From Octopus bimaculoides (lineage: Eukaryota), in NCBI RefSeq assembly GCF_001194135.2, contig NC_068999.1, positions 6,861,218-6,925,217 on the forward strand: 64,000 bases of DNA. The letters are read 5' to 3'. The number at the start of each line of letters is the position of its first letter. Position 1 is the stretch's first letter. This document shows, one piece after another, positions 5,661-62,959 of this stretch. The notes beneath the pieces were generated by a model. It saw only the letters and a list, made by a program, of their open reading frames with translations, was not told the origin of the DNA and searched no databases. The position numbers and the translations under genes were made by a program.

Positions 5661-5699
5661 TTTCAGCCTCCTCCTCCGACAACGATGACGCTACCGCTG

Positions 5700-6373: not shown

Positions 6374-6500
6374 CAGTATGCCAAACATAATGAACCCATA
6401 CATAAGTGCTAGCAGCAAAGAAAAGCCACTGAACAGGTATGAAGAGATAGCAGATGACATCTGATGTGATAGCAATACAAACAAAAAATACAGAAAATGC
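6374..6500 (-). CDS. MACO1: Macoilin coding exon 3 (127 nt): AFSVFFVCIAITSDVICYLFIPVQWLFFAASTYVWVHYVWHT+G
   Basis: Forms the C-terminal part of ORF 6366..6779. Poly-T plus TTTCAG acceptor and GTAAGT donor; phase 0 in, phase 1 out. Matches the recalled macoilin motif LFIP.QWLFFAASTYVWV.YVWHT. Confidence 0.97.
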
Positions 6501-6780: not shown

Positions 6781-6794
6781 TATCTCTCTCTCTT

Positions 6795-6844
<50 letters not shown>

Positions 6845-8232: not shown

Positions 8233-8267
<35 letters not shown>

Positions 8268-9640: not shown

Positions 9641-9729
9641 TCCAAATGGTTAGTTGATTAACGATAAAGTTGTGAGGAGCTGAAACTAGGGATTAAGGCC
9701 ATAGAGTATGTGCATCACAATGAAATTTT

Positions 9730-16903: not shown

Positions 16904-17045
16904 CAGGCCTTGATATTTGAATGAATCATACACACTCCTTAACAATAACCAAAATGGCCACAGATATTCAAATCGAAATTCCAACATGAAGTCAGCCATT
17001 ACAACTATAGCCCAAACCATAAAAAACTTCAGGTAGAGGAATGTA
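16904..17045 (-). CDS. MACO1: Macoilin coding exon 2 (142 nt): (S)TFLYLKFFMVWAIVVMADFMLEFRFEYLWPFWLLLRSVYDSFKYQGL
   Basis: Polypyrimidine tract plus TTTCAG acceptor and GTAAGT donor; phase 2 in, phase 0 out. Near-identical to the recalled macoilin membrane region (EFRFEYLWPFWL, RSVYDSF.YQGL). Not in the ORF track. Confidence 0.97.
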
Positions 17046-25933: not shown

Positions 25934-26454
25934 GGAGGTGCAATCGCCCAGTGGTTAGGGCAGCGGACTCGCGGTCATAGGATCGCGGTTTCGATTCCCA
26001 AACCGGGTGTTGTGAGTGTTTATTGAGCGAAAACACCTAAAGTTCCATGAGGCTCCGGCAGGGGATGGTGGCGAACCCTGCTGTACTCTTCCACCACAAC
26101 TTTCTCTCACTCTTACTTCCTGTTTCTGTTGTGCCTGTAATTCAAAGGGTCAGCCTTGTCACACTGTGTCACGCTGAATATCTCCGNNNNNNNNNNAGGG
26201 GATGGTGGCGAACCCTGCTGTACTCTTCCACCACAACTTTCTCTCACTCTTACTTCCTGTTTCTGTTGTGCCTGTAATTCAAAGGGTCAGCCTTGTCACA
26301 CTGTGTCACGCTGAATATCTCCGAGAACTACATTAAGGGTACACGTGTCTGTGGAGTGCTCAGCCACTTGCACGTTAATTTCACGAGCAGGCTGTTCCGT
26401 TGATCGGATCAACTAGAACCCTCGACGTCGTAAGCGACGGAGTGCCAGCAACAC
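25934..26454 (+). mobile_element. Young tRNA-derived SINE (family D) with 15-bp target-site duplication
   Basis: Head GGAGGTGCAATCGCCCAGTGGTTAGGGCAGCGG..GGTTTCGATTCCC, tail ..CGACGGAGTGCCAGCAAC. AGTTGTGCATTAGTG occurs at both 25920-25934 and 26455-26469. Other copies at ~13021-13237(-), 14046-14288(-, internal deletion) and 31838-32078(-). Confidence 0.88.
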
Positions 26455-26877
26455 AGTTGTGCATTAGTGCAAAACACTTGGTTATAATATAGTTACTGCA
26501 ACACTTGGTTATAATATAGTTGTGCATTAGTGTAAAACAGAAACAATGTATACAACTGGTGCAGTTATGCATTTTGTTAGAAGAGTTATTGTTCTCATAC
26601 ACTTGATGTCACTCCAATTGACGTGTTCTTAAGCTTTGTTTTGAGGATATATAAACACATAAATTACAATCTACACCAGTTTATTGTTTCTCCTCCAATA
26701 CTAGCTTTCATGTTGTTCTTTATATTTTAAAACTAACCCAGTCAGAGAAAGTAAATATCAAAGGGATCAGTTTCACACATAAGATATGTGTCTGGATGGG
26801 TATGTATGTATGTATGTATGAGAGAGAGAGAGAGAGGGAGAGAGAGAGGGGGAGAGAGAGAGAAGGAGAGAGAGAGA

Positions 26878-26915
<38 letters not shown>

Positions 26916-27081
26916 AAGGGAGTGTGTGTATGATTGTATGTGTGTATAAGTACATGTACAGACAAATACTTATATATGTGTAATATGTATGTATTCAAGT
27001 CTGTGTATAAATACACACACATTGGAGCATGATGCAGTCCTTGGACCCCTAGGATTCTAGTAAGCCCTTAAATGATGATCG

Positions 27082-27112
<31 letters not shown>

Positions 27113-28652
27113 AAATACACATGTGTAATATGTACATTTGTGCATATGCTAGTGCTAACATGCTATCTTCAAGATAGCAATGTGTTCTAGGAGATGTTTC
27201 ACTTTAATTAAATTTATTCATCTAAGTTATCCCCTTTGTAGAGTGGATTTCACTTATCATCTTAATTCAATTCATACATTTGCAGTGATTCAACTGCCAA
27301 TATTCTGAGCAGAATTGGAGTTGCAAATTGGATTTATTATACATTATACCGGAAATCTGGAAGATTCTCCCACTTTTGAAACGGTGCTCTTGTGAAAGTT
27401 TTTCTGTACTTTCAATATACAAGCATGAATTAGACATGTCTTAATACACAAAAGTGTTTTAAAAATCATTTCCTGTGGATAAGATGGGTTCCTTTAATTG
27501 GTTCAACTGATTTCATATTCAGTGTATTCTGTTATGTGATATCGTGTGATGTATAAAAAGGAAAAACATCAAAGTTACAGTGTCGGATAGACACCTCTTC
27601 TCTTCCAATAAATCACAGGAATATTGAAGTTTGGAGCTGACAGAATAATTAATACATTTCACAAAATACTTAGGTGACATTTCTCACAGCTCTTTACATT
27701 CTGAGTTCAAATCCTGCTCAGGAAAACTTTGACCCTATTGAGGTCAATAAAATTAAGTACCAAAGGTGTGGTTGTGTGGTAAGAAGCTTGCTTCCCAACC
27801 ACATGGTTCTGAGTTCAGTCCCACTGCATGGTACCATTGGTAAGTATCAACACAACTTTCTCTCACTCTTTCTTCCTGCTTTTGTCGTATCTGTATTTCA
27901 AAGTCGCCAATAAGCTTAGAAATATTACAAATACCTTCCAAAATAATTATACTGACCCCAAACGCACACGTCAACAGCACAAGTTCACTGTGGAAACACA
28001 TGGTTTGGGGTTCAGTCCTGGCATGCGGCACCTTGGATAAATGTCTTCTACTATAGCTCCAAGTCAACCAACACATTATGAGTAATCTGGTAGATGGAAA
28101 CTGTGTTGAAGCCCCATTGTATATATGATCCATGGCCCTATATGTGCCAACAGCCTGGTAGTTAAGGATCTCCTGGCATATAGGACCACATTTCAATGGG
28201 CCATGTCCATGCTCCAAAAAAAAAAAAGTAGGATGTGATTTGAGAGATATTCTGGTTCCCGTTTCTAGCACATAAAAGTGCTTTTACTGATTCACCAATG
28301 GGTTTTGTGCATTTTGTGGGCACTCGCAGATTACAAAGGATGTATGGATATGTATGCTGTGTGTGGGACAGAGAGATGGAAGGAGGAAGGCGGGGGCTGT
28401 GTCGGTGGGGGTACAGAATATGAAGCAGCTGTATTGAGCAAGGGAGAGGGGTGTTCTAAAACTATAAGCATACAAAAAAATAACAGCAACAGCGATAATA
28501 ATAATAATAATAATAATAACAAAATAAAATAAAATAAAAGGATGGACTTCCAAATCAGGAAAACGACAATTGTTTTCTGACCATTGTTTCTACAATTAGA
28601 ACGCCGGCAACACGAAGTATATTTACATAACTACTTTGCAAACAGACAAAGC

Positions 28653-28737
<85 letters not shown>

Positions 28738-31029
28738 GAGAGAGAGAGACACTTAAAGACAACAGAGAGTAAACTCCACAACACAACAAAACCAAACAAT
28801 TAACTCCTTTAACTCCAACTTGCAACTACAAGCACAAATTAACACACACACACACACACAGACACACAATCTCAGTCCAGACTTTTAATATGTTAGTCAA
28901 TATCCTCTTTCTCTGTGAGCTTCTACATGGTCACTAGAACCACAAGAAATAGCAGCCAAACCACTCTACCATGTTCTCCCACTTATGCACCTGAAAAGGA
29001 CCGTGTTGGATAATGTAGTCCCAGATACACTGTGCATATGAATATGGGGGGGAGGAGAGCATTTCTGTATGGAGAAGCATGGCTGTGAAGTAATTAAGAA
29101 GCTAGCGTTGCATGCATGTGGTTTTGGGTTGACCAATAATGCCTTACGGGTGAATTTGGTAGACGGAAACTGTGTGGAAGCCCATCACATATTACATACA
29201 TACAAGTCACATGGTTATGTGACTGACCAGACTATTGCTACCAGACTTGTTACACATCGCTGGTCACAATGCGCTTTGCATCGTTTTAGTTTTTGAATGA
29301 TGCCATTGCAATGGCGAGGCAAACAGGTCAACATTCCCCCTGAGCGACCTGGAGCAATGTGAAATGAAGTGTTTTGCTCAGTCTGGGAATTGAACCCACG
29401 ATCTAGTGATTGTGAGTGCAACAGCCTAACCACCAGTGACGTCACAACTGACGTCTACAGCTGAGCGACCTGGAGCAACATGAAATAAAGTGTTTTCATC
29501 AAGAACACAACACACAGCCCGGTCTGGGTATCGAACTCACTACCTCATGATTGCAAGCTTAATGCTCTAACCACTCTAAGTGTTAGTGGGTGGGTGCCTT
29601 TTACATGTGACCAGCACCAGCCACAACTACAATTTCACTTGACTTGATAAGTCTTCTCAAGCACAGCAAATCCTCAAAGGGCTGGCCAGTTTAAATGCTA
29701 AAATGTCAATACTACAACCCCCATCTTGATAATGACAATTAATTTACTAGAACCTCCATTTTTTTCCGTCCCCCCACCCAAATTAATTGAAACAAAAGAA
29801 ATGTGATGGATTCCATTGGAACTCGCAAGCAACTGCAAGAAGAGTGCACACAATATTTCTCTGCCTATAATAACCATGTCACCAAATCAACTCACTTTTG
29901 ATGGATAACTGAACAGTATGAGATATATATTGTCTTAAAACCCGAACCAACACAAACAGATTAATAGATTCAAAGGTAGTTATTTATTCATTTTGCATAT
30001 TTTTACATGCATACCCACCACATTCTTCTTATTACCCACCTCTCTCTCTCTATCCCTCATTTTCTCCCCCACCCTCTGTACAGATAATATAGATTTTTTT
30101 GTTTTTTTTTTGTTTATTGTCTGCATTTCCATCCAGAAAGAATAGCAAAACGTCTGACAGACTTGATGGTCTATTTACCGAGATGAAACAACAACCAGTT
30201 AAATATAAACTCAGCAAACATTTTAATTCATAAAAATCAGACATGGAACTGCTTTGAAGGTCTTGNNNNNNNNNNNNNNNNNNNNNNNNNNNNNNNNNNN
30301 NNNNNNNNNNNNNNNNNNNNNNNNNNNNNNNNNNNNNNNNNNNNNNNNNNNNNNNNNNNNNNNNNNNNNNNNNNNNNNNNNNNNNNNNNNNNNNNNNNNN
30401 NNNNNNNNNNNNNNNNNNNNNNNNNNNNNNNNNNNNNNNNNNNNNNNNNNNNNNNNNNNNNNNNNNNNNNNNNNNNNNNNNNNNNNNNNNNNNNNNNNNN
30501 NNNNNNNNNNNNNNNNNNNNNNNNNNNNNNNNNNNNNNNNNNNNNNNNNNNNNNNNNNNNNNNNNNNNNNNNNNNNNNNNNNNNNNNNNNNNNNNNNNNN
30601 NNNNNNNNNNNNNNNNNNNNNNNNNNNNNNNNNNNNNNNNNNNNNNNNNNNNNNNNNNNNNNNNNNNNNNNNNNNNNNNNNNNNNNNNNNNNNNNNNNNN
30701 NNNNNNNNNNNNNNNNNNNNNNNNNNNNNNNNNNNNNNNNNNNNNNNNNNNNNNNNNNNNNNNNNNNNNNNNNNNNNNNNNNNNNNNNNNNNNNNNNNNN
30801 NNNNNNNNNNNNNNNNNNNNNNNNNNNNNNNNNNNNNNNNNNNNNNNNNNNNNNNNNNNNNNNNNNNNNNNNNNNNNNTTATCTTATTTTACAGATTGAT
30901 AATTTTAGCCACCAGATCTGAAAAAAAAATCTCAGTTCATTTCAAGAAAGCAATATAAAAATAAAACTCTACTGATTATAATTTGGAATTCAGGAAAAAG
31001 TACAAATTATGAATGATCTTTTGCATGTA

Positions 31030-31385
31030 TGCAGGCGTGGCTGTGTGGTTAAAGTTCTGTTTCCAAATCGCATAGAACATGGTTTGGGGTTCAGTACCAC
31101 TGCATGGCAGCTTGGGAGAATCTCTTCTCCTTCTGTCATTGTCTCTGTCAGGCCAACTGAAGCCCTGTGAGTGGATTTGGTAGATGGAAACTGATAGAAG
31201 CCCGTCCGCAGGCATGGCTGTATGGTAAGAAGCTTGCTTTCCAACCACATGGTTCTGGGTTCAGTCCTACTGTGCGGCACCTTGGGCAAGTGTCTTCTAT
31301 TATAGCTTCAGGCCAACCAAAACCTTGTGAGTGGATTTGGTAGATGGAAATTGAAAGAAGTCCTCTGTGTGTGTATGTTACTGTC
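31030..31385 (+). mobile_element. Head-to-tail dimer of family B SINE heads
   Basis: Two consecutive GCAGGC(G/A)TGGCTGT..GG...GAAGCCC/GAAGTCC units. Confidence 0.8.
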
Positions 31386-33039
31386 TCCTGCTTTTGACTT
31401 TGCATGATGGTTATAAATGAACATCACCAACATGAGATCAGTGTCCTTCATTTCCAATCTTCCCCAAAAGCATGTCAGGCCACAAGGACATGTCGAACTT
31501 ACTCAGAAATAGGAGAAGATTGGCAACAAGAAGAGCATCTGGCCATAGAAAAATTCAATGCCCCAGCACACACTACCAATGTGACCAAATGCAAACTTGG
31601 GAAGCTGGAAGCACTGCATCACCTTACATCAGAGCCTAGATGTTGTGCCAATAAATTACCACCTTTTCTGAACCATGGCTCATTTCCTGCACATATGGAG
31701 GTTTAACAATGTGGATGGCATTGAAAATGGGCACAGGGAATTCTTCACCCGAAACCCAGCCAAATGGTATAAGTATGGTATTCAGCTTCTGGCACAATGA
31801 TAGTAACTAGCAGACAATAGAATATGATAGGATATGTGTTGTTGTTGGCACTCCGTCGCTTACGACGTCGAGGGTTCCAGTTGATCCGATCAACAGAACT
31901 GCCTGCTCGTGAAATTAACGTGCAAGTGGCTGAGCACTCCACAGACACGTGTACCCTTAACGTAGTTCTTGGGGATATTCAGTGTGACACAGTGTGACAA
32001 GGCTGACCCTTTGAAATACAGGTACAACAGAAACAGGAAGATAGAATGAGAGAAAGTTGTGGTGAAAGAGTACAGTAGNNNNNNNNNNNNNNNNNNNNNN
32101 NNNNNNNNNNNNNNNNNNNNNNNNNNNNNNNNNNNNNNNNNNNNNNNNNNNNNNNNNNNNNNNNNNNNNNNNNNNNNNNNNNNNNNNNNNNNNNNNNNNN
32201 NNNNNNNNNNNNNNNNNNNNNNNNNNNNNNNNNNNNNNNNNNNNNNNNNNNNNNNNNNNNNNNNNNNNNNNNNNNNNNNNNNNNNNNNNNNNNNNNNNNN
32301 NNNNNNNNNNNNNNNNNNNNNNNNNNNNNNNNNNNNNNNNNNNNNNNNNNNNNNNNNNNNNNNNNNNNNNNNNNNNNNNNNNNNNNNNNNNNNNNNNNNN
32401 NNNNNNNNNNNNNNNNNNNNNNNNNNNNNNNNNNNNNNNNNNNNNNNNNNNNNNNNNNNNNNNNNNNNNNNNNNNNNNNNNNNNNNNNNNNNNNNNNNNN
32501 NNNNNNNNNNNNNNNNNNNNNNNNNNNNNNNNNNNTATATATATATATATATATATATGTATATACACATACACACACACAAATGATATATGATAGATAT
32601 ATCATATATCAAAATGAAATTTCTGCCTTAAGTGAGTCTTTATTAGCTCCACAATATATTAATTAGATAAAGAAATTAATGTACAAATTGCATGGTGATT
32701 GCCAATCAATTGAATAAGACAAGAGCCAGGAAGTTAAGTATAAAGTTTCTGTTATTGACCAGTTCCACTTCATATAATAGCATCGGAAGGAAAGTAAGGA
32801 AAGTAGAGCAACGTCAGCTTTGTCACCAGCCTTAACAGAATCTGCTACTGCCAATAGATAATCCGATAATCCGCTCTGTGATGAACCTACAGGAGTCTCA
32901 TTTTCCTTCAATACCCTAGAGTAATGCATGGTTGTATACATTCTATCTCAATTAATAGTGGAGATTGATTCAGGTTTGTATGTTTAATCTCTGGCAGGGA
33001 AGACAAAGAATAGACTATAAATATAGTGTTGTATGGAGA

Positions 33040-33142
33040 GAGAGGTGGTAGAGACCGTGAGCGAGAGAGAGAGAGAGAGAGAGAGAGCAAAGGAGAATGG
33101 ACAAGGGAAGGAGAGAGCTTGAGCAAGAAAGCGTTAATAAGA

Positions 33143-33183
<41 letters not shown>

Positions 33184-33252
33184 AGGGAGGGCTAGAGCAA
33201 GGAAGAAAGAATAAAAGAGGGACAAAGAACTTGAGCAAAAAAGAGAGAGAGT

Positions 33253-33316
<64 letters not shown>

Positions 33317-33360
33317 TTAAGCCAAGAAAAGAGTAAGGGAGAGAGTAGAAAAGAGAGACA
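33040..33360. repeat. Compound (GA)n/(AGAT)n purine-rich microsatellite; similar tracts at 8345-8570, 26820-26915, 43550-43631
   Basis: Direct reading. Confidence 0.9.
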
Positions 33361-33936
33361 AATGAATTAACATAACAAAATAAAAATGCAACAAAAAAAA
33401 AATAATAAAATCTTGAATCGTAGAGTTAGATAATCTTCAGTTATAAGATGAGATGAAGAGGAGACAAAATGATGGAAAGTAAATTCTTTATTTTTCTGTT
33501 AAAACACCAAATCATTTTCACACAGATTGTTTGTTGACTTCTATGTCTGTCTTAACTCTAACTCCAACACTTAATACTTATACTTCCATTTGGGTAACTA
33601 TAGCAGACTAATAAATGACATACAACTATTGATTCAGCTTAATGATTAAAAGCAAGCCATGCTTTTAAAACCTAGGCTGGAGACAACTGAGCAGAGCTAA
33701 CCAATGACAAAGCTGCTACTCGGTTGCTCATCCTGTTCGAAATGGTGAGTCAAAAAGGGAATCCTTACAAGATTGCTTGAATCATAGCGTACCGTCTTCG
33801 GAAAGGAAAATATACACAGGTCAACTGTTGCTTCATACCAACCTTGAAAGAGGAGGGGGTGATTTTGGCATGATTATGATATTTAATGCATATGTCTTGC
33901 TTAATTTTGAAAATAATACTAAAATAACCGTCATTA

Positions 33937-34323
33937 TTAACCCTTTAGCATTCAGATTACTCTATCAAATAGCATGCTTATTTATTCACATTGTTGTAAG
34001 TTAACCATGTGTTATTTTGTAGCTTTGAGATTTTGATGGGGTGATTGTATATTTTTAGAATGACATTGTAGGGTAGGTGTGAGAGGCCAGATCTGGTGAG
34101 TTAGAACGTAAAACAAGTAGAATATTTTGGCCACTTATCATCATCATCATCGTTCAACGTCCGCTTTCTATGCTAGCATGGGTTGGACGGTTTGACTGAG
34201 GACTGGTGAACCAGATGGCTACACCAGGCTCCAATCTGATTTGGCAGAGTTTCTACAGCTGGATGCCCTTCCCAATGCCAACCACTCTAAGAGTGTAGGC
34301 TGGTTTAAATGCTAATGGGTTAA
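33937..34323. mobile_element. TTAA-flanked MITE (piggyBac-like) carrying a nested retroposon copy
   Basis: TTAA-CCCTTTAGCATT...AATGCTAATGGG-TTAA ends; body matches the 53822-54043 copy; family A insert at ~34136-34297. Confidence 0.75.
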
Positions 34324-41717: not shown

Positions 41718-42660
41718 TCTTTCATTCCTGAGTAAGCTTTTATTTATTATAATTAATATTAATAGACAAGGTTCGCGTCCAAAAGGGTTGACCCAGATTA
41801 CAATTACACACACACACATATATATATATATTAGAGAGAGAGAGAGAGAGATGGAAGAAGACAAAACGAAGTGGTGCCATTCCAAAGAATATTAGACACG
41901 TAATTACGCAGCGTATATGTGTGTATGTATNNNNNNNNNNNNNNNNNNNNNNNNNNNNNNNNNNNNNNNNNNNNNNNNNNNNNNNNNNNNNNNNNNNNNN
42001 NNNNNNNNNNNNNNNNNNNNNNNNNNNNNNNNNNNNNNNNNNNNNNNNNNNNNNNNNNNNNNNNNNNNNNNNNNNNNNNNNNNNNNNNNNNNNNNNNNNN
42101 NNNNNNNNNNNNNNNNNNNNNNNNNNNNNNNNNNNNNNNNNNNNNNNNNNNNNNNNNNNNNNNNNNNNNNNNNNNNNNNNNNNNNNNNNNNNNNNNNNNN
42201 NNNNNNNNNNNNNNNNNNNNNNNNNNNNNNNNNNNNNNNNNNNNNNNNNNNNNNNNNNNNNNNNNNNNNNNNNNNNNNNNNNNNNNNNNNNNNNNNNNNN
42301 NNNNNNNNNNNNNNNNNNNNNNNNNNNNNNNNNNNNNNNNNNNNNNNNNNNNNNNNNNNNNNNNNNNNNNNNNNNNNNNNNNNNNNNNNNNNNNNNNNNN
42401 NNNNNNNNNNNNNNNNNNNNNNNNNNNNNNNNNNNNNNNNNNNNNNNNNNNNNNNNNNNNNNNNNNNNNNNNNNNNNNNNNNNNNNNNNNNNNNNNNNNN
42501 NNNNNNNNNNNNNNNNNNNNNNNNNNNNNNNNNNNNNNNNNNNNNNNNNNNNNNNNNNNNNNNNNNNNNNNNNNNNNNNNNNNNNNNNNNNNNNNNNNNN
42601 NNNNNNNNNNNNNNNNNNNNNNNNNNNNNNNNNNNNNNNNNNNNNNNNNNNNNNNTATAT

Positions 42661-43631: not shown

Positions 43632-44435
43632 NNNNNNNNNNNNNNNNNNNNNNNNNNNNNNNNNNNNNNNNNNNNNNNNNNNNNNNNNNNNNNNNNNNNN
43701 NNNNNNNNNNNNNNNNNNNNNNNNNNNNNNNNNNNNNNNNNNNNNNNNNNNNNNNNNNNNNNNNNNNNNNNNNNNNNNNNNNNNNNNNNNNNNNNNNNNN
43801 NNNNNNNNNNNNNNNNNNNNNNNNNNNNNNNNNNNTATATATATATATATATTTATAAATGCATTACACAGATGCAATGTATATACATAAACACAATCGT
43901 GTTCCGAGCACACTTCGTTAGGGTATTTCGTGTACTGATTGTGATGTGAATCTGCTTCGAAACACTCTCCCCCACCTTCACTCATCAGATTTTCCCCCAC
44001 CTGAAATGGAAGGGTGCCTCGACGCGATCGGTCGCACGATCAGCTAGAAATAGCAGACCAAATCTCCTCCCAAATCACACGTTTAATTAATTAATTAATT
44101 AATTAAACGAAAGCCTACAGTGATGACCATAATCCAGATATATAAAAAAACAAAAAAGGAAAATCCCCTTCCTTCAAGACGAGATGGTCACGGTTGCAAC
44201 GCCTTTTCATCATAGGTCTGCTCGTTCGGAGCTGACCTGGGGTTGAACAACGACTGCAACATCGCCATATCCAACGTTCTGATATAAAATTGGTTTTGAC
44301 AAGCAACGAATATGAACAACAATTGCAGCAGCAGCAGAAAGCGAACCAATGCCAGATCAATAGACAAATCTAGAGAGATCGCTAGATGTTATAGAAACAA
44401 GCAAAGAACATTACGAGTACGTGCATGCATTCGTG

Positions 44436-45700: not shown

Positions 45701-46033
45701 TCGCTGGAAGCGGATACAGAAGTGGCATCACCTTCAGGCGACAAAACACTGACAGAATATACTCTACCAACTTTCTCGAAGACAGACGCCGAATTAAATC
45801 ACAGTTTTATTTCATAAAAGCATCGACAGCAGAATTTAATATTTACAATAAACCGTTTTTTCTTTGTCTTTTAAATTTACAAAGGAATACAAAAGAATCA
45901 GCCTTGGTTTTTAGAACAATTTCTACATTCTTTAACTTGTCAAAGAATTACACAGCACGGGCGAGTATTGTGTATACACACACACATTATCATTTAATGT
46001 ATATATATATAAATATATAAATATATATATATA

Positions 46034-46900
46034 NNNNNNNNNNNNNNNNNNNNNNNNNNNNNNNNNNNNNNNNNNNNNNNNNNNNNNNNNNNNNNNNNNN
46101 NNNNNNNNNNNNNNNNNNNNNNNNNNNNNNNNNNNNNNNNNNNNNNNNNNNNNNNNNNNNNNNNNNNNNNNNNNNNNNNNNNNNNNNNNNNNNNNNNNNN
46201 NNNNNNNNNNNNNNNNNNNNNNNNNNNNNNNNNNNNNNNNNNNNNNNNNNNNNNNNNNNNNNNNNNNNNNNNNNNNNNNNNNNNNNNNNNNNNNNNNNNN
46301 NNNNNNNNNNNNNNNNNNNNNNNNNNNNNNNNNNNNNNNNNNNNNNNNNNNNNNNNNNNNNNNNNNNNNNNNNNNNNNNNNNNNNNNNNNNNNNNNNNNN
46401 NNNNNNNNNNNNNNNNNNNNNNNNNNNNNNNNNNNNNNNNNNNNNNNNNNNNNNNNNNNNNNNNNNNNNNNNNNNNNNNNNNNNNNNNNNNNNNNNNNNN
46501 NNNNNNNNNNNNNNNNNNNNNNNNNNNNNNNNNNNNNNNNNNNNNNNNNNNNNNNNNNNNNNNNNNNNNNNNNNNNNNNNNNNNNNNNNNNNNNNNNNNN
46601 NNNNNNNNNNNNNNNNNNNNNNNNNNNNNNNNNNNNNNNNNNNNNNNNNNNNNNNNNNNNNNNNNNNNNNNNNNNNNNNNNNNNNNNNNNNNNNNNNNNN
46701 NNNNNNNNNNNNNNNNNNNNNNNNNNNNNNNNNNNNNNNNNNNNNNNNNNNNNNNNNNNNNNNNNNNNNNNNNNNNNNNNNNNNNNNNNNNNNNNNNNNN
46801 NNNNNNNNNNNNNNNNNNNNNNNNNNNNNNNNNNNNNNNNNNNNNNNNNNNNNNNNNNNNNNNNNNNNNNNNNNNNNNNNNNNNNNNNNNNNNNNNNNNN
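46034..46900. other. Largest assembly gap; other gaps at 2225-2556, 17256-17352, 26187-26196, 30266-30878, 32079-~32535, 41931-42655, 43632-43835, 50216-50517, 52867-53199
   Basis: Runs of N, most abutting (TA)n/(TG)n/(GA)n microsatellites. Confidence 0.99.
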
Positions 46901-47201: not shown

Positions 47202-48490
47202 GTTACTGTCACATTCAAACTCAGTTTGCGACACCTTAGTAATACATATTAAAGCAAACTGATGTTGCTGTATGCACAATATATCGTCCACCAAATACCA
47301 GGAAACATGATGGAAAATTTGAGGATAGCCTCAAACATATCGAAGAGGAATTAAGAAACCTAGATCAGAACATCAACATACTCTTCCTGGGTGATTTCAA
47401 CCTCCCACATGTGAAATGGCCAGAAGGCCACCTCCTCTCTGGGATGTCATTGTATGAACAAAAGCATGTAGAATCATTATTTAAACTTACTAAAAAGCTG
47501 TTCATGGAGCAAGTGATACTCAGGCTAACCATGGGAAACAACATATTGAAACTATGCTTCACAAATAATGTGGACCTTATCCATAGTGTGAAGGTGGCAC
47601 CAACGGCACTCTCAGATTACGACGTTGTTGAACTAACTATGTATAGTCCTGCAGGAACTGTTGGTATCTACCCTATCAGGAGGACTCAAACCTTATCCAA
47701 CCTGAATTTCTACAAGGCAAAATGGGAATCAATCTGCAAAGAAATCCACAAACGAAACTGGTCCAACATTCTGTGTATGTAAGACATTCATCTGAAACCG
47801 AGCCAGTTTATAAACAGTGCAAGCTATATGCACTAAATATGTCCCAGAAAGAAGGGCCAGCACACCACCAAGCAAGATTCCCAGGGACAGAAGAGTCCTC
47901 AAAGATCTCAAAGAAGCTGAATAGGCAACTAAAGGATAGAGAGGAGTCTATCTTAACAGGGACGCCCCTAGAAATTGAAAACAAGATCAGACTCTCTCAC
48001 AGAAGGGAAAGAGCAGAGAGAGGGAGAGAGAAAAAGGCCGTGGAAAGCATAAAAACAAATCCCAAAGCTTTCTATAAATTTGCAAAAGAAACAGCCACAA
48101 TACAATATAAAATAGGACCATTGTTTCAAGGGAATGACTCGCTGACGGCGGACCCAGGAAGGATAAGTGAGCAATTTAAAAGTGTCTTCACTTCCCCCCT
48201 TGGACACATGCAGATAAAAAAAATCCAGCTGGAGGCACCAGCCATCAATTACATCAACATTGAGGAAACAGATGTAACAGCGGCCATACATGAAATGAGC
48301 TCATGTTCCGCCACTGGTCCTGATGGCTTCCCGGCTATTCTCCTAAATTCATGTAAGCACGCTTTAGCGAAACCACTTCAGATACTTTTCCAAAGTTTTC
48401 TTGCAAGTGGTAAACTTCCCAAAAAGCTGAAAGAAGGCATTATATGCCCTGTCCACAAAGATGGAAGCAGAGCAGAGGCCAAAAACGTCG
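47202..48490 (+). mobile_element. CR1-group non-LTR retrotransposon ORF2 fragment (AP endonuclease plus start of RT)
   Basis: TIYRPPNT, ILFLGDFNLPHVKW and GNNILKLCFTNN (APE); SATGPDGFPA and LKEGIICPVHKDGSRAEAKN (RT N-terminus) in ORFs 47411..47782 and 47722..48528. Frameshifted, and truncated before the YRPI and YADD motifs. Confidence 0.88.
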
Positions 48491-49729
48491 GTGAGTTTCC
48501 ATGGCGAGAAATAAACCGCGTTAAATAGATCGAAGCATGCAATATATCGTTGTTTATTATTTAATCCCTAAGATAGCAGTTCTAATCGAAAAGACATTCT
48601 AGCCGTGATCATTCAAAATTTTCAGTATATCTTTCAGACCACACTGGCCAATCTATCCTTCCTATTTTAGGATGGTTGGGTTTGGTTTTGAAGGAAATTT
48701 CAGCTGCTATTTCTTGCTGCAGGATCGACCGTGTAGAAATTTCCTTGTTTACTCAATTCAACCATGACAACCCCATCTGATTATTACTCCCCCCCACCAC
48801 CACCACCAACAACATCTTGGTCACTATATCATTCAAATATGTACTTTCCTTCTTTTACACATGATAGGGTGTAGCTTGAGTCGATATTTCTAGCAAGACG
48901 GGCGACCGCTTATAGGCTTCTTCGCTGGAAACAATAGACGTTATTTTCAGTCTTTCGTCAAGCCCTTTTGGTTCAAAGGGCATTCCAACCACGACCGTCC
49001 AATCTCACCATCCTTTTCCCCACACACACTGCTTCTGTGACAGCCTTTATCCAAGGTTTCCTTTTAACATTTTTAAATGAGAGAAATTTAACTGCTATTT
49101 CTTCTAGTAGCCCACCACCACCACCACCACCGCCATCATATCTCTCTCCTTTGTGTCTTGGGAACCCAAAAAGAATAAGAGAAAAAAAAAAAAAAAAGAA
49201 AAGAACGAAAATACAAAAAGTAGATTTCGTTGGCGTGCCTGATTGAATCCGGTTCTGAAACAAGGATGTTTCTATCATTTATTTATTTATTTATAGAAAA
49301 TATTAATAAAGAAACCCACAAAAAAAAAATATAAAAGAAATAACGGGAGAAAACAATACTACTACTTAAACCGGAACAACTATGGTAAATTGAATGGTGG
49401 AGGCGACTGGCTAAACTTGCCAATCTTCTCATGAAGCCTTCCTCTCTACCGCCTGTAAATTCACATGTATTATAAAAGAGAGATGGCCTGGGATTTTTCT
49501 CTCTTTTCGTTCATTCATTCAGTCACTCATTCATTCATTCAAGAGTTAAAAGCACCAATCTACTCATAATTGTTTTTAGAGGATAAATATCACAAACATA
49601 ATAGACACAAGTTCATTATATAAGCACCACACGGAAGATCATATAAGCACATATCCATGTATTTATGTATACACGTGTGTGTGTGTGTATTTTTTTGTGT
49701 GAATTCTCCCTCCCCCCAACCACACATAG

Positions 49730-49965: not shown

Positions 49966-50673
49966 GAGAGAGAGAGAGAGAGAGATGTATATATGTATTA
50001 ATATTAATTCATATTTATTTCAATATTTGTGCGATTTTCTACATATCTCTCTATATTACCGTATTCTAATATTGCGTAAATATTATTTAGAATACACATG
50101 GATATAAACCAGTCTCTCCTACCACAAGTGAATTGCTCATTCACTGAATTATATATCTTAGCGAGGAAATTGGCTAAATTTCCTTCCACAGACATTTGTA
50201 CTCTTAACGCAAATCNNNNNNNNNNNNNNNNNNNNNNNNNNNNNNNNNNNNNNNNNNNNNNNNNNNNNNNNNNNNNNNNNNNNNNNNNNNNNNNNNNNNN
50301 NNNNNNNNNNNNNNNNNNNNNNNNNNNNNNNNNNNNNNNNNNNNNNNNNNNNNNNNNNNNNNNNNNNNNNNNNNNNNNNNNNNNNNNNNNNNNNNNNNNN
50401 NNNNNNNNNNNNNNNNNNNNNNNNNNNNNNNNNNNNNNNNNNNNNNNNNNNNNNNNNNNNNNNNNNNNNNNNNNNNNNNNNNNNNNNNNNNNNNNNNNNN
50501 NNNNNNNNNNNNNNNNAAAAGATATTGGGAAGCAATTAAAAGGACCAAGTCTCTATCTATCGGACATCGGGTCACGCTCGTTCGTTCGGCATATCGAAAA
50601 CACGTTAAGCGTACAAGTGCCTGTCGAATTTTTCCAGCTACTTCCACCTTAACTAAATGATTTAATGTACAGC

Positions 50674-50708: not shown

Positions 50709-51791
50709 CGTATGTATATCAATGATTCTTTTTATGTTTATATATATATATATATATACACACACATATATGAACGTACGTACATTAATGATTATATACA
50801 TATATATAAATGGCGTAACTACAGGGTTTATGCCATATAAATATATGTGTGTGTGTGTGTGTGTGTGTGAAAAAATATGGCCAGCCAAACATTAACTAAC
50901 GGATCGCTCAAATACCTTAAGCAGATTAACACAATTTCTTTTACAAGGTTGATAGTGACTTCGTCAGACTGACGAAAGCAAATAGACCGAAACTTCGAAG
51001 TCGCTGCCAACCGTTTTCGCGCGCGCGCACGTACGAATGCGTGTGTATTTCCGCGCGCACACAATATGTACTTTTACGTCGAACTGCTAAAATGAAAATT
51101 TACGACCAACAGATATATAAAACACATTTTTAACAGAAACTCAATCACATTACACACACACACAGGTAGACAAACAGACAGACAGACAAATATAGACGGA
51201 CACGCACATGCATGCGAGGATCCACGTTTAACGCATGAATGGTTTTCATTTACTTTAGCGATCGACAATATACTTTTATAAATATCCTCTTCAGTCCACA
51301 AATAGATGGAGAAAAAAAAAAAAATTCTCCTTACAAATGAAACTACAATATTATGAATAAAGCAAAGGCGTTGAAAAGAAGGATTTCATTTTAATTTCAC
51401 GCTTCACTGAATCATTGCCACCTGTCTTTTCACCACGTTTATTCTGAGTATTCCTCGTCTAAAGCTCTTAACAATCTCTTGCAGCAGAATCTCTACGGCC
51501 TTTCGTTTTCCTTGAAGCATCAACAAAATTATCTGAAACCACGTTGTTTATTTATCTCTAGTAACCCGAAGTCAGCTCTGACCTAGCAGACTTCAAGCCA
51601 TGCAACCGTGACGCTCCTCCTCCAAGATGTAACGATGTTTAGGGACATATATATTTAAATGTTGTCCTTTTCTCTTTAAGATGCTAGAATAAAATTTGCG
51701 GGAGTTTAGTTCCTGTGTCTAGCAGGTCTAGGAGTGACTACTTCGAGATTCTATCGTGGGGTTCTTAGGAAACAAATTTTATAATTCATAC

Positions 51792-58499: not shown

Positions 58500-59304
58500 A
58501 TAATGGTTTCAAATTTTGCCACAAGGGCAGCAATTTTGGGGGAGGGGACGAGTCGATTACATTGACCCACCCCCCTCCCCAGTGTTCAACTGGTACTTAT
58601 TTTATCGACCCCGAAAGGATGAAAGGCAAAGTCGACCGCGGCGGAATTTGAACTCTGAACGTGAAGACGGGCGAAATGTCGCTCAGCAGTATTGCCCAGC
58701 GTGCTAACGATTCTGCCATCTCGCCGCCTTTACAATGTGAGATAATGATGTTGCTATATAAACATATACATGAACACACACACATTATGTAAATATATAT
58801 ATTATATACCCGCACATACATATATGCATACACACATATATATATACACGTTGTACACACACATATATATATATATATATACACGCACGAAAATACATAC
58901 ATATAGATATGTATACAATTGTGCGCGCGCTCTGCATTTTTACAGTGGAATCGTTTTTTTGAAATGAGAGGAAGTTGGGGTGGGTGGAAAAAAGTGAGAT
59001 TTTGTTTGATCTTGTCTCCTAAACCTTGCATGAACAAGAAAGTGAAACGAAATTGGATGTTGTGGTGTTCATGCCTGCTTTTCAACGGGAACCAGCAACG
59101 CATATGGAGAGAGAAACCGGCTTGGAAATATGCGAGGTTATTAAACGAAACGAACGTTTATCAACCAGGATTGCCGGGTCGGGGGTAGAAGACATGCAAC
59201 TGCTCTTAGACAAAATAACAACAATAATAATGGTCTCTAATTTAGAAACCAGCAATTTTGAGGGAAGGGAGTCAGTCGATATCACCGACCAGTATAAGAC
59301 TGGT

Positions 59305-61086: not shown

Positions 61087-61525
61087 CAAATAAACAAGCA
61101 TCATGATTGAGGGGGATAGAGGAAAAAAAAGGTATGAAATGTGTAACTGAGGACATATTAAGGAATGCAGATGAAAAATAAAAGGCTTTAGAAAGGGGAA
61201 ATCGAACAAAGGAGCACCAATAATTTATTAGGGATCGAAATATAGAATTGTAAACATGCGAGTCTCAAAGACTCTTATGTGCCGGTATAATAATAATAAT
61301 GAAGGGGATGAGGAAGAGGACTAAACAGAATGAAAGAGAAAGAGTTGCCAGAGAAATTAGAAAGACAAAGAGGTAGAAAGAGAGGGACGGGAGAAAGACT
61401 AGTAGTAGTGAGTAAGTAGGAGGAAGGGGAGGGCGCTCTTTTTCTGCCATATTGAAAAACTAGCAAATGTTGGTTTATCCTTCGATCAAAGACATTGAGA
61501 TTGTGTATTTCTGAGAAATGCTTAC

Positions 61526-61605
61526 CTTCCGTAAATGCTATCAGTTATTTTGCTGCGCTTCACCGGGCGCCGCAGTTTGCCACTCTCGGCATTCCGTCTC
61601 TTCAT
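61526..61605 (-). CDS. MACO1: Macoilin coding exon 1 (80 nt): MKRRNAESGKLRRPVKRSKITDSIYG+AG
   Basis: Manual translation closely matches the recalled macoilin N-terminus (human MKRRNADCSKLRRPLKRNRITEGIYGS). ATG at 61605 has A at -3. The exon ends at a GTAAGC donor in phase 2, matching exon 2. Confidence 0.96.
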
Positions 61606-62114
61606 ATTCCAATACGAACCGATGTTTTCTCTCCTTTCTTTCAAGCGAGCTAGCTTAGAAATGACAAAATAACAACACTGTGTATGCGTATGTGTACGTG
61701 TGTGTGTGTGTGTGTGTGTGTGCCTGCCTATGTATGTATATGTGTGTGTTCTAGCGTGTGTGTGTGCGTACTTATTGTAATTGCTTGTTTTTGTTGTTGT
61801 TATTTGTCTCTTCAGTTTTTTTTTTTTAATTTGTTAAAATCGTAAATCCTCACATTAAACTCTCAACTAATTTTCCACAAATAAAAATCAAGAATTACGT
61901 TAAAAGATAAAACAAAAAACACAAGAAACAAGACAAAAATATATTCCAACGAGACTTGTACGAGATCCTGCCGCGCGTTAGTTTGACGTAAAAACAACCA
62001 TTCTCAACAGCGTCTATTACAATACGGAAAGTTCCGTAAACCCAGCATTCACTACGTCAATTTACGTACATTTCCGTATCCCGTTTCGTTAAAGATCGTT
62101 ACTTTCCGTAGTTG

Positions 62115-62129
62115 CTTCAAGAATATTCC
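62115..62129. promoter_or_regulatory. Canonical three-unit heat-shock element (cTTCaaGAAtaTTCc)
   Basis: Exact match to nTTCnnGAAnnTTCn upstream of a chaperonin gene. A second partial GAAagTTC is at 62027-62034. Confidence 0.7.
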
Positions 62130-62130
62130 G

Positions 62131-62138
62131 TATAAATT
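62131..62138 (+). promoter_or_regulatory. TATA-like box (TATAAATT) for CCT8
   Basis: About 30 nt upstream of a 20-nt pure pyrimidine run (62151-62170) and 78 nt upstream of the CCT8 ATG. Confidence 0.55.
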
Positions 62139-62208
62139 GCATTTCACCCATCTTTTCTCTTTCTCTCTCCGAAATTCTTCAGCTCTTCGCAATTATTTCC
62201 CTCACACC

Positions 62209-62268
62209 ATGGCACTACACGTACCAAAAGCACCCGGCTTCTCTTCTATGTTAAAAGAGGGTGCAAGG
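62209..62268 (+). CDS. CCT8: T-complex protein 1 subunit theta (CCT8) coding exon 1 (60 nt): MALHVPKAPGFSSMLKEGAR
   Basis: CACC-ATG-G start context. The peptide matches the recalled CCT8 N-terminus (human MALHVPKAPGFAQMLKEGAK). Followed by a consensus GTAAGT donor at 62269. Exon 2 was not found before 64000. Confidence 0.94.
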
Positions 62269-62959
62269 GTAAGTTAACGAGTTATTTTCGAGGATTTCAC
62301 TTTAAAATTTAACACAAAAACTTGAAAGACCATGTGAGCAGTCATTAATTAAATTCCAATTAATGGTGCTTGTCTTGTTTATTTCCTCAGTTTCTTCATT
62401 GTTATAATTAATTCTGAACACAATTTTACTCTATGATGTTGCCTCAATTACTTAAAAACATATTTTTACAATAAATTACCACATAAGACCTTAATTAATT
62501 AAATAAAAACCGCTTTCTTCCTCTCCCAATGGCCGGGGCGTGATGATAAATACCGCTTTTATAATTAATATCTAAACCATGCGGCCTCTTATTCCCTGTT
62601 ACTATTAGAATTTCTACCTATTTTTATTTACTACATTTATAGATATGTGTTTTAAATTTTTATAATAATGTCATCTGTTGATTGCATGTTCTTGATTTTG
62701 CATGCTGTGTCATCTAAGCGGGTCATAAAGTTACCCATTGATGGAAATTATGAAGGCACCACATGGCATATTACATCTCATATCCATGCTTAACGACTGA
62801 ACCCCATTTATTAAAAAGACTTTATTTTAAATTTTGTATTCTAACAACGGTACAGCATCTCAGTATATTGTTTAATGTCATCATCATTTACTCTGGTTCT
62901 CCCTTCCCCGCCATTTTGCCCTCTTCTTTTTATTTTATTTCGTAACGTTCGCTGACATG

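What the first reader, a model, noticed from the sequence alone, without database searches (positions are those of the whole stretch)
61526..62268. Macoilin and CCT8 are head-to-head on a 603-bp shared promoter
Seen: two first coding exons diverge with ATGs at 61605 (-) and 62209 (+). Known: CCT8 is a cytosolic chaperonin subunit; macoilin is a conserved, neuron-enriched ER/nuclear-envelope membrane protein; as I recall, the two human genes are on different chromosomes. Inference: a compact bidirectional promoter in a genome where introns reach 10-44 kb suggests co-regulation of a folding chaperone and a neuronal membrane protein, possibly lineage-specific.
Basis: partly seen in the sequence, partly recalled or inferred. 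Interest (0 to 1): 0.72.

Follow-up and report, generated by a model that had tools for sequence, protein, structure and literature searches.

The report
Ancient macoilin–CCT8 divergent gene pair
In this octopus sequence the first coding exons of macoilin and the chaperonin subunit CCT8 face away from each other across 603 bp; the layout is real but is not an octopus novelty, because molluscs, a brachiopod, a nemertean and an annelid all share it.

Summary
Macoilin exon 1 (61605..61526, minus strand) and CCT8 exon 1 (62209..62268, plus strand) diverge across a 603-bp gap. Both have canonical splice donors and good Kozak contexts. The window is most likely Octopus bimaculoides (116/116 identity to its macoilin N-terminus).

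The "possibly lineage-specific" idea is refuted. The same head-to-head pair occurs in all eight lophotrochozoan genomes sampled, in four phyla: O. sinensis (757 bp between coding starts), Bulinus (209), Ylistrum (209), Liolophura (240), Lingula (359), Lineus (379), Owenia (2,483) and this window (603). It was absent within 10 kb in a scorpion, a wasp, a dragonfly and a fox. NCBI already annotates the adjacency, and it lies inside a block that Schmidbaur et al. 2022 catalogued on their cephalopod sheet.

A shared promoter is plausible but unproven. A CpG-enriched block (about 61,950-62,140) holds six GGAA-core (ETS-like) TTCCGTA sites, CRE-like half-sites and a TATA box followed by a pyrimidine tract. 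Related motifs recur in the other species' gaps. No transcript data were available, so the TSSs, any 5'UTR introns and co-regulation remain untested. This is an ordinary bidirectional arrangement, and a new example of a conserved microsyntenic pair.

The parts
61526..61605 (-). Macoilin first coding exon (ATG at 61605; 26 codons + 2 nt; phase-2 end)
   Evidence: Spliced with exons 2-3 it hits PF09726 at E=2e-62. It is 116/116 identical to O. bimaculoides macoilin.
61520..61525 (-). 5' splice donor GTAAGC of macoilin intron 1 (about 44.5 kb)
16904..17045 (-). Macoilin exon 2 (142 nt), with a ...tatttcag acceptor and a GTAAGT donor
6374..6500 (-). Macoilin exon 3 (127 nt), with a ...ctttttcag acceptor and a GTAAGT donor
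62209..62268 (+). CCT8 (TCP-1 theta) first coding exon: 20 codons, Kozak context ACCATGG, followed by the donor GTAAGT at 62269-62274
   Evidence: All 6 PDB hits are CCT theta residues 1-20, E=6e-6. The exon boundary is the same in six other species.
61606..62208 (.). 603-bp interval between the two start codons (GC 0.36, CpG o/e 1.45)
61950..62140 (.). CpG-enriched, non-GC-rich block: the candidate shared activator and core-promoter region
   Evidence: 13-16 CpG per 200 bp and o/e 2.1-2.25, against 0.51 window-wide; at or above the 99th percentile of 200-bp windows. ACGGAA occurs 5 times against 0.09 expected from the flanks.
62023..62038 (.). 16-nt palindrome TACGGAAAGTTCCGTA, formed by two inverted GGAA-core (ETS-like) sites
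62053..62078 (.). Two overlapping palindrome-like units, TACGTCAATTTACGTA and TACGTACATTTCCGTA. They include the CRE-like half-site TGACGT (minus strand) and a TTCCGTA site at 62072-62078.
62104..62110 (+). TTCCGTA site
62126..62132 (+). TTCCGTA site, overlapping the start of the TATA-like box
61984..61991 (+). CRE-like TGACGTAA
   Evidence: TGACGT occurs twice in the gap against 0.13 expected.
62039..62056 (+). Weak Staf/ZNF143-binding-site-like 18-mer AACCCAGCATTCACTACG (CCCA at positions 3-6, C at position 12)
   Evidence: Read from the sequence against the SBS definition in PMC3082894. The pattern carries little information (about 2.4 expected by chance in the gap), so this is a lead only.
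62131..62137 (+). TATAAAT, a TATA-like box 72 bp upstream of the CCT8 ATG
   Evidence: A promoter role is inferred from position only.
62149..62170 (+). Pyrimidine tract CATCTTTTCTCTTTCTCTCTCC. It is either a TCT/TOP-like initiator about 25-30 bp after the TATA box (predicted CCT8 TSS about 62159-62163) or the polypyrimidine tract of a 3' splice site.
   Evidence: This is inference; no transcript data were available.
62175..62182 (+). Acceptor-like TTCTTCAG, 26 nt before the CCT8 ATG. If it is used, CCT8 has a 5'UTR intron.
   Evidence: Acceptor-like sites sit at similar positions in Lingula (TTTTAG, 21 nt before the ATG) and Owenia (TTTATAG, 28 nt before the ATG).
61654..61673 (-). Acceptor-like GTTATTTTGTCATTTCTAAG on the macoilin strand, ending 48 nt upstream of the macoilin ATG. 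It would mark a possible 5'UTR intron.
   Evidence: This is inference only.
61678..61775 (.). Imperfect (TG)n microsatellite, followed to about 61950 by T-rich and A-rich low-complexity sequence. This spacer makes the octopus gap longer than the 209-379 bp seen in five other species.

Best explanation
The interval is the intergenic region of an ancient divergent (5'-5') gene pair, macoilin and CCT8. The pair has stayed head-to-head since at least the last common ancestor of molluscs, brachiopods, nemerteans and annelids.

The most likely mechanism is a shared bidirectional promoter region. A CpG-enriched block of about 190 bp (about 61,950-62,140) carries clustered GGAA-core (ETS-like) sites and CRE-like half-sites. 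This block would recruit activators that serve two back-to-back core promoters.

On the right, a TATA-like box (62131) and a pyrimidine-rich initiator (about 62160) would give CCT8 a 5'UTR of about 50 nt.

On the left, macoilin transcription would start near the left edge of the block. It would reach the ATG at 61605 either through, or by splicing over, a microsatellite-rich spacer of about 300 bp.

Because the two promoters share or interleave their elements in a few hundred bp, any breakpoint between the genes would damage at least one of them. That would explain why the adjacency has persisted.

Shown here: the exons, their orientation, the conservation of the pair, the CpG and motif enrichment, and recurrence of related motifs in orthologous gaps. 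Inferred: the TSS positions, factor binding, shared use of the elements and co-regulation.
For: - The exons and gene identities are established.
- The pair is head-to-head in 8 of 8 lophotrochozoan genomes: this window (603 bp), O. sinensis (757 bp), Bulinus (209), Ylistrum (209), Liolophura (240), Lingula (359), Lineus (379) and Owenia (2,483).
- The first-exon boundaries are conserved in the seven for which DNA was read.
- Euprymna and Callistoctopus share a block listing TCP-1/cpn60 next to macoilin (PMC9023564 Supplementary Data 1).
- The CpG block is at or above the 99th percentile of the window.
- TTCCGTA occurs 7 times in 64 kb, and 5 of those lie within 110 bp. The chance of that clustering is about 1e-9.
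- ACGGAA occurs 5 times against 0.09 expected.
- Plus-strand purine content flips from 0.63-0.72 to 0.36-0.43 across the interval, as expected for divergent transcription.
- CATGCGC, (A/T)TTCCG and TTCTGGGA recur in the other species' gaps well above flank expectation.
- In Owenia, which was held out when the motifs were defined, GACATGCGC, GGCATTC and TTTCCGT lie within about 50 bp, next to macoilin.
- Published work shows that GABP/ETS and Staf/ZNF143 sites can drive transcription in both directions (PMC2077898, PMC3082894).
- Conserved ancestral gene pairs are enriched for 5'-5' orientation and gaps under 1 kb (PMC3514665).
Against: - No transcript, CAGE or chromatin data were available for this species, so neither TSS is mapped.
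- Acceptor-like sequences lie 48 nt upstream of the macoilin ATG and 26 nt upstream of the CCT8 ATG. Either gene could therefore have a non-coding first exon.
- The motif block is asymmetric: it lies 75-250 bp from the CCT8 ATG but 350-420 bp from the macoilin ATG.
- The CATGCGC and TTCTGGGA motifs shared by other species are absent from the octopus gap.
- Overall k-mer sharing across gaps is only modestly above shuffles (k=7 in at least 4 species: 5 against 1.4).
- A TATA-like box is untypical of classical bidirectional promoters (my own recollection; not checked against a paper here).
- Macoilin is neuron-enriched in worm and mouse (PMC3093358) whereas CCT8 is ubiquitous, so the outputs may not be coupled.
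- The TACGGAA(A/C) sites deviate from the strict GABP consensus CCGGAAGTG.
Confidence: 0.7

Rival explanations
1. The two promoters are merely adjacent and independent. CCT8 has its own TATA-plus-initiator promoter with the ETS-like cluster, and macoilin has a separate, possibly neuron-biased promoter in or left of the spacer. The adjacency persists because the target for breakpoints is tiny or because of other constraints, not because elements are shared. There is no meaningful co-regulation.
For: - The motif cluster and the TATA box sit on the CCT8 side.
- A low-complexity spacer of about 300 bp separates them from the macoilin ATG.
- Macoilin is neuron-enriched in worm and mouse.
- In Owenia the coding starts are 2.5 kb apart.
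Against: - In five species the whole gap is only 209-379 bp, which leaves little room for two fully independent promoters.
- In Owenia and Lingula the motif cluster sits next to macoilin, and CCT8 appears to bridge the gap with a 5'UTR intron, which keeps the TSSs close.
- Retention in 8 of 8 lophotrochozoans across four phyla is hard to explain without constraint.
Confidence: 0.2
2. The interval is not macoilin's promoter. Macoilin transcription starts at a distant non-coding exon, possibly beyond the CCT8 start, and splices into the acceptor-like site 48 nt upstream of the ATG. The genes would then overlap or interleave and would not share a promoter.
For: - An acceptor-like sequence, GTTATTTTGTCATTTCTAAG, lies on the minus strand at 61673-61654.
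- Octopus introns are very long: 44 kb and 10 kb in this gene.
Against: - In five other species the inter-ATG gap is 209-379 bp and holds promoter-like motifs.
- Strand composition flips within the interval itself.
- No candidate upstream exon could be identified, and nothing in the data calls for one.
Confidence: 0.07
3. This is the first reader's reading: the head-to-head arrangement is a cephalopod- or octopus-specific innovation that couples a chaperonin to a neuronal membrane protein.
For: - The five-gene block FAM69-MFAP1-MFAP1-TCP1/cpn60-macoilin is filed on the 'Cephalopod' sheet of Schmidbaur et al. 2022 Supplementary Data 1.
- The pair is absent in fox, dragonfly, wasp and scorpion.
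Against: The two-gene core is present, in the same orientation and with the same first-exon boundaries, in a gastropod, a bivalve, a chiton, a brachiopod, a nemertean and an annelid.
Confidence: 0.02

Closest known systems
Bidirectional promoters of divergent gene pairs, as described in human (GABP/ETS- and Staf/ZNF143-dependent; PMC2077898, PMC3082894)
   Same: - Two protein-coding genes lie head-to-head with under 1 kb between them.
- The intergenic segment is CpG-enriched.
- GGAA-core (ETS-like) sites are clustered in both orientations.
- Orthologous gaps carry a CCCAGAA core that fits the SBS (CCCR at positions 3-6, C at position 12) and a CATGCGC (NRF1-like) motif.
   Different: - No TSS or reporter data exist here.
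- The octopus block is not GC-rich (GC 0.38).
- It carries a TATA-like box.
- Its TACGGAA(A/C) sites differ from the strict CCGGAAGTG consensus.
- Binding by any particular factor was not tested.
Conserved ancestral microsyntenic pairs (CAMPs; Irimia et al. 2012, PMC3514665), for example HSPE1-HSPD1 sharing a bidirectional promoter
   Same: - The two genes are unrelated neighbours.
- The pair is kept in a conserved 5'-5' orientation with a very short intergenic distance across phyla.
- One partner is a chaperonin gene.
   Different: - HSPE1-HSPD1 encode functional partners and are linked from humans to fungi.
- Macoilin and CCT8 have no known functional link.
- Their pairing was found only in Lophotrochozoa here, and not in the mammal or the three arthropods sampled.
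- The CAMP supplementary lists could not be read.
Cephalopod microsynteny block 14048 (EUPSC) / 3067 (OCTBI) in Schmidbaur et al. 2022 (PMC9023564, Supplementary Data 1)
   Same: The block lists TCP-1/cpn60 and macoilin side by side and is shared by Euprymna, O. bimaculoides and Callistoctopus. It is most likely the same locus.
   Different: - The published block has five genes and is filed at the cephalopod node.
- The two-gene core shown here is much older.
- The paper does not discuss this pair or its promoter.

Membership tests
Macoilin family (PF09726) | Sequence match to the conserved N-terminal transmembrane region | tested here: met
   The spliced exons 1-3 (116 aa) gave 222 hits, and all 120 listed carry PF09726 (best E=2e-62). 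The sequence is 116/116 identical to O. bimaculoides macoilin.
CCT8 / TCP-1 theta subunit | Theta-specific N-terminus MA(L/M)H(V/I)P..PGF..M.K.GA(K/R) | tested here: met
   The 20-aa exon matches only CCT theta chains, at residues 1-20 (6 of 6 PDB hits, E=6e-6). The same exon occurs in theta orthologues of six other species.
CCT8 / TCP-1 theta subunit | Full-length group II chaperonin domain (PF00118) | not testable with these tools
   Only exon 1 lies in the window. In O. sinensis the divergent neighbour of macoilin is a 543-aa PF00118 protein.
Bidirectional promoter (divergent pair) | Two genes on opposite strands, arranged 5' to 5' | tested here: met
Bidirectional promoter (divergent pair) | Transcription start sites less than 1 kb apart | not testable with these tools
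   The ATGs are 603 bp apart, but no transcript 5' ends were available. Acceptor-like sites upstream of both ATGs leave non-coding first exons possible.
Bidirectional promoter (divergent pair) | The intergenic fragment drives transcription in both directions, and shared sites affect both genes | not testable with these tools
   This needs a dual-reporter or mutagenesis experiment.
Bidirectional promoter (divergent pair) | Enrichment of CpG and of ETS/GABP-, NRF1- and ZNF143-type motifs | tested here: inconclusive
   CpG and GGAA-core sites are strongly enriched in the window. The NRF1-like CATGCGC and the SBS-like CCCAGAA occur in other species' gaps but not in the octopus gap. The octopus SBS-like 18-mer is weak.
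Conserved ancestral microsyntenic pair (CAMP) | Adjacency of non-paralogous genes conserved across several phyla | tested here: met
   The pair is present in Mollusca (4 classes), Brachiopoda, Nemertea and Annelida.
Conserved ancestral microsyntenic pair (CAMP) | Conserved relative orientation | tested here: met
   The orientation is 5'-5' in all eight genomes (same calls).
Conserved ancestral microsyntenic pair (CAMP) | Conservation reaching beyond one superphylum (deuterostomes, ecdysozoans or non-bilaterians) | tested here: not met
   The pair is absent within 10 kb in fox, dragonfly, wasp and scorpion. Amphioxus, echinoderms, hemichordates, cnidarians and priapulids were not tested.
Cephalopod-specific (novel) microsynteny | The linkage is absent outside cephalopods | tested here: not met
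   The two-gene core is present in seven non-cephalopod or non-coleoid lineages. Only the larger five-gene block is filed as cephalopod-level.

The most novel reading that the evidence does not exclude
The macoilin-CCT8 divergent pair would be a previously unremarked, very old microsyntenic pair: at least the lophotrochozoan ancestor, and possibly bilaterian with losses in arthropods and vertebrates. It would be held together for more than 500 million years by an indivisible bidirectional promoter. That promoter's motif grammar (ETS-like GGAA sites, an NRF1-like CATGCGC and a Staf/ZNF143-like CCCAGAATGC core) matches the motif types associated with human bidirectional promoters: GABP and Staf/ZNF143 per the papers read here, and NRF1 from my own recollection. 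This would imply that the bidirectional-promoter grammar predates the protostome-deuterostome split, and that a housekeeping chaperonin promoter has been co-opted to supply basal transcription to a neuronal ER protein.
Probability: 0.25. Interest if true: 0.5.

Novelty: new member of a known kind. Interest (0 to 1): 0.28.

Why it matters
For the octopus itself this is routine annotation. The adjacency is already visible in NCBI gene models and in a published synteny table.

What is modestly useful is the correction of scale. The two-gene core is not a cephalopod novelty. It is a pan-lophotrochozoan 5'-5' pair that survived the extensive genome reshuffling of coleoids. The published block method appears to need at least three genes, so it could have missed a two-gene core like this.

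The pair offers a compact, phylogenetically replicated test case for two questions:
- Whether invertebrate bidirectional promoters use the same ETS/NRF1/ZNF143-type elements as human ones. The gaps of 209-757 bp in seven of the eight genomes sampled (2,483 bp in Owenia) make this tractable.
- Whether an ubiquitously active promoter can be shared with a tissue-biased gene.

Tried and rejected
I replaced it with a PDB sequence search.

2. I used human macoilin and CCT8 sequences written from memory as tblastn probes only. Database proteins later confirmed their N-termini.

3. I hoped to find same-species transcripts with 5'UTRs.
- No octopus CCT8 was among the top 120 hits.
- The O. sinensis macoilin is on one genomic contig only, and its gene range was too long for DNA to be returned.
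- TSS mapping was therefore impossible.

4. The Tachypleus look-up returned nothing, and all 12 look-ups are now used. Deuterostome invertebrates and cnidarians could not be sampled.

5. My recollection that USP16 is head-to-head with CCT8 in mammals was wrong. In fox it lies downstream and convergent.

6. Literature searches for macoilin, TMEM57 or MACO1 together with CCT8 found no paper. The supplements of Irimia et al. 2012 are not held.

7. De novo k-mer sharing across six gaps is only weakly above shuffles, so I do not claim an alignable conserved promoter sequence.

8. I considered reading GGAAAGTTCC as an NF-kB/Rel site or a STAT site and dropped it. The half-site spacing and orientation do not fit those consensus sequences as I recall them.

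9. I considered the TTCCGTA cluster as a tandem repeat or transposable element and rejected it.

10. The Rfam scan of 60.5-64 kb gave only microsatellite-driven hits far below gathering scores.

11. Pfam on four intronic ORFs gave no hits.
Full report
**What is there**

The window is eukaryotic: GC is about 37%, it has many microsatellites and it contains 3,939 N in assembly gaps.

On the minus strand, an ATG at 61605 opens an 80-nt exon. It encodes MKRRNAESGKLRRPVKRSKITDSIYG and ends at 61526 before a GTAAGC donor. tblastn located two further macoilin exons, at 17045..16904 and 6500..6374. Both have polypyrimidine/AG acceptors, GTAAGT donors and consistent phases. The introns are therefore 44,480 and 10,403 bp long.

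The spliced 116 residues hit 222 proteins, and all 120 listed carry PF09726, the macoilin family (best E=2e-62).

On the plus strand, an ATG at 62209 in an ACCATGG context opens a 60-nt exon. It encodes MALHVPKAPGFSSMLKEGAR and is followed by GTAAGT. Against all PDB chain sequences this peptide matches only T-complex protein 1 subunit theta, at residues 1-20 (6 of 6 hits, E=6e-6).

The two start codons are separated by 61606..62208, which is 603 bp.

**Which organism**

The macoilin N-terminus is 116/116 identical to O. bimaculoides XP_014775788. It is 115/116 identical to the O. sinensis and O. vulgaris proteins, which have L where the window has I in "AIVVM". The window is most likely O. bimaculoides.

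**Is the arrangement lineage-specific? No.**

I looked up genomic loci for macoilin or CCT8 proteins of other animals. I checked the flanks both in the gene tables and by tblastn. The table gives the result; "gap" is the distance between the two coding starts.

| Species | Group | Head-to-head pair? | Gap (bp) |
|---|---|---|---|
| This window (O. bimaculoides) | Cephalopod | Yes | 603 |
| O. sinensis | Cephalopod | Yes (NCBI annotation) | 757 |
| Bulinus truncatus | Gastropod | Yes | 209 |
| Ylistrum balloti | Bivalve (scallop) | Yes | 209 |
| Liolophura sinensis | Chiton | Yes | 240 |
| Lingula anatina | Brachiopod | Yes | 359 |
| Lineus longissimus | Nemertean | Yes | 379 |
| Owenia fusiformis | Annelid | Yes | 2,483 |
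| Centruroides | Scorpion | No, within 10 kb | – |
| Cotesia | Wasp | No, within 10 kb | – |
| Ladona | Dragonfly | No, within 10 kb | – |
| Vulpes | Fox | No, within 10 kb | – |

- In O. sinensis the neighbour is a 543-aa PF00118 gene diverging from the 107.7-kb macoilin gene.
- In Bulinus the macoilin ATG is at L001:10001(+) and the CCT8 ATG at L001:9791(-). All CCT8 exons were found on the opposite strand.
- In Owenia the neighbour's first exon, MALHVPRPPGISQMLKDGAK, confirms that it is the theta subunit.
- In every species for which DNA was read, the two first coding exons end at the same codon positions as in the window.
- In fox a USP16-like gene lies downstream of CCT8 and convergent with it. 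That corrected my own recollection.

The pair therefore goes back at least to the common ancestor of Mollusca, Brachiopoda, Nemertea and Annelida.

**Prior knowledge**

No paper in the searchable library mentions macoilin, TMEM57 or MACO1 together with CCT8.

The locus does appear in Supplementary Data 1 of Schmidbaur et al. 2022 (PMC9023564). On the sheet "Cephalopod", block 14048 (Euprymna) is linked to block 3067 (O. bimaculoides), and Callistoctopus is also in the network. The block lists FAM69, MFAP1, MFAP1, TCP-1/cpn60 and macoilin.

That places the larger block at the cephalopod node. Figure-3 legend text in that paper requires clusters of at least three genes, so the older two-gene core could have escaped such a catalogue.

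**Anatomy of the 603 bp**

The right-hand third of the gap differs from the rest of the window.

- Windows covering 61,900-62,199 hold 13-16 CpG per 200 bp. Their o/e is 2.1-2.25, against 0.51 window-wide. This is at or above the 99th percentile, although GC is only 0.38.
- TTCCGTA occurs seven times in the 64 kb, and five of those fall within 62,023-62,132. The chance of such clustering is about 1e-9.
- ACGGAA occurs 5 times in the gap against 0.09 expected from the flanks.
- Three sites form 16-nt palindrome-like units, TACGGAAAGTTCCGTA, TACGTCAATTTACGTA and TACGTACATTTCCGTA. This arrangement suggests dimeric binding.
- CRE-like TGACGT half-sites occur twice against 0.13 expected.
- A TATAAAT box sits at 62,131-62,137. 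It is followed 12 nt later by a 22-nt tract (62,149-62,170) that is all pyrimidine apart from one A.
- That tract could be a TCT/TOP-like initiator, giving a CCT8 TSS near 62,160 and a 5'UTR of about 50 nt. It could instead be the polypyrimidine tract of the acceptor-like TTCTTCAG that ends at 62,182, 26 nt before the ATG.
- Lingula and Owenia have acceptor-like sites 21 and 28 nt before their CCT8 ATGs. Owenia also has a GTAAGA donor just past its motif cluster. CCT8 5'UTR introns are therefore plausible in this clade.
- The left two-thirds of the gap (61,640-61,950) is an imperfect (TG)n microsatellite followed by T-rich and A-rich low-complexity sequence. It looks like spacer expansion relative to the 209-379 bp gaps elsewhere.
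- On the macoilin strand an acceptor-like GTTATTTTGTCATTTCTAAG ends 48 nt upstream of the ATG.
- Plus-strand purine content falls from 0.63-0.72 left of exon 1 to 0.36-0.43 right of about 62,000. The sense strand is therefore pyrimidine-rich in both directions.
- Rfam finds nothing credible in the interval.

**Comparative motifs**

The gaps of the other species contain three recurring motifs:
- CATGCGC (NRF1-like) in 4 of 5 species, and CATGCG in all 5.
- (A/T)TTCCG or ACGGAA (ETS-like) in Liolophura, Ylistrum and Lingula.
- TTCTGGGA in Liolophura, Ylistrum and Lineus. GGCATTCTGGGA is identical in the scallop and the nemertean, just 5' of the CCT8 ATG.

Each occurs far above the density in its own flanks.

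The reverse complement of the last motif, TCCCAGAATGCC, fits the Staf/ZNF143 binding site as defined in PMC3082894: CCCR at positions 3-6 and C at position 12. ACGGAAGT in the scallop is close to the GABP consensus CCGGAAGTG (PMC2077898).

Owenia was not used to define these motifs. It has GACATGCGC, GGCATTC and TTTCCGT within about 50 bp, 110-165 bp from the macoilin ATG.

There are caveats. Unbiased k-mer sharing is only modestly above shuffles: at k=7, 5 k-mers occur in at least four species against 1.4 expected, and at k=8, 5 occur in at least three species against 1.9 expected. The octopus gap lacks CATGCGC and CCCAGAA. Its only SBS-like 18-mer (62,039-62,056) matches a pattern expected about 2.4 times by chance.

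**Interpretation**

The best reading is a conserved 5'-5' microsyntenic pair with a shared promoter region. This fits the framework of Irimia et al. 2012, in which conserved pairs are enriched for divergent orientation and for gaps under 1 kb, and HSPE1-HSPD1 is the classic example.

An activator cluster at about 61,950-62,140 would serve a TATA-plus-pyrimidine core promoter for CCT8 on the right. It would also serve a leftward macoilin start. Overlap of the two promoters would make the pair hard to separate.

The identities, layout, conservation and enrichments are shown. The TSSs, factor binding, sharing of elements and co-regulation are inferred.

The main rival is two adjacent but independent promoters. 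Supporting it, the motifs and the TATA box lie on the CCT8 side, and macoilin is neuron-enriched in worm and mouse (PMC3093358). A distant non-coding macoilin first exon cannot be excluded, but nothing calls for one.

**Verdict**

The feature is an ordinary kind of genome architecture that is already visible in public annotation. The new element is that this particular pair is pan-lophotrochozoan. Interest is low to moderate.

Noticed in passing
window ~2,250-2,550; 17,200-17,400; 30,270-30,880; 32,050-32,500; 41,930-42,650; 43,650-43,850; 46,030-46,900; 50,220-50,520: Runs of N (3,939 in total) flanked by (AT)n, (TG)n or (TA/CA)n microsatellites. These are assembly gaps at simple repeats inside macoilin introns, so the intron lengths are approximate.
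   Followed up: partly
window 47,722-48,528 (+), with an adjacent ORF at 47,411-47,782: An intact 268-aa ORF in macoilin intron 1 has no Pfam match. By eye it resembles part of a non-LTR retrotransposon ORF2 (it contains GPDGFP), but this is unconfirmed.
   Followed up: partly
window 50,850-51,200 and 58,500-58,800: These are the highest CpG densities in the window (20 and 15 CpG per 200 bp), inside macoilin intron 1. The first contains the palindrome TTCGTCAGACTGACGAA, (CG)n runs and an ATTTCCGCGCGC element. It could be a repeat, an intronic regulatory element or an unannotated promoter.
   Followed up: no
L009 (Owenia fusiformis) ~4,180-4,823: At least eight tandem copies of a fragment encoding QVAHPAAKMIVMASQ, the 5' part of a CCT8 exon, lie in the intron just upstream of the real exon (4141-4007). 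This is an exon-derived tandem array inside the gene.
   Followed up: no
L007 (Lineus longissimus) ~9,725-9,925: The macoilin-CCT8 gap contains a long, nearly perfect inverted repeat, centred on AACAGGTGACGCCAC...GTGGCGTCACCTGTT. It looks like a hairpin or MITE-like insertion in the shared promoter region.
   Followed up: no
L002 (Centruroides sculpturatus) 14,767/23,892 and 17,656/26,780: Macoilin exons 2-4 recur with identical sequence 9,125 bp apart, and the locus is annotated as two partial macoilin genes. This is either a recent tandem duplication or an assembly artefact.
   Followed up: no
L010 (fox) 25,698-34,147: A USP16-like gene (zf-UBP + UCH) lies downstream of CCT8 on the opposite strand, so the two are convergent. 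Nothing is annotated within 10 kb upstream of mammalian CCT8.
   Followed up: yes
L001 (Bulinus truncatus) ~100-9,791 (-): The gene table returned for this locus called no gene over a complete, multi-exon CCT8. A Bulinus CCT8 protein (P0121) does exist in the database on the same contig.
   Followed up: partly
window 61,527-61,533: A sixth plus-strand TTCCGTA overlaps the macoilin exon 1/donor junction; on the minus strand it reads TACGGAAG|GTAAGC. It is probably a coincidence of coding and splice sequence and not a regulatory site.
   Followed up: no
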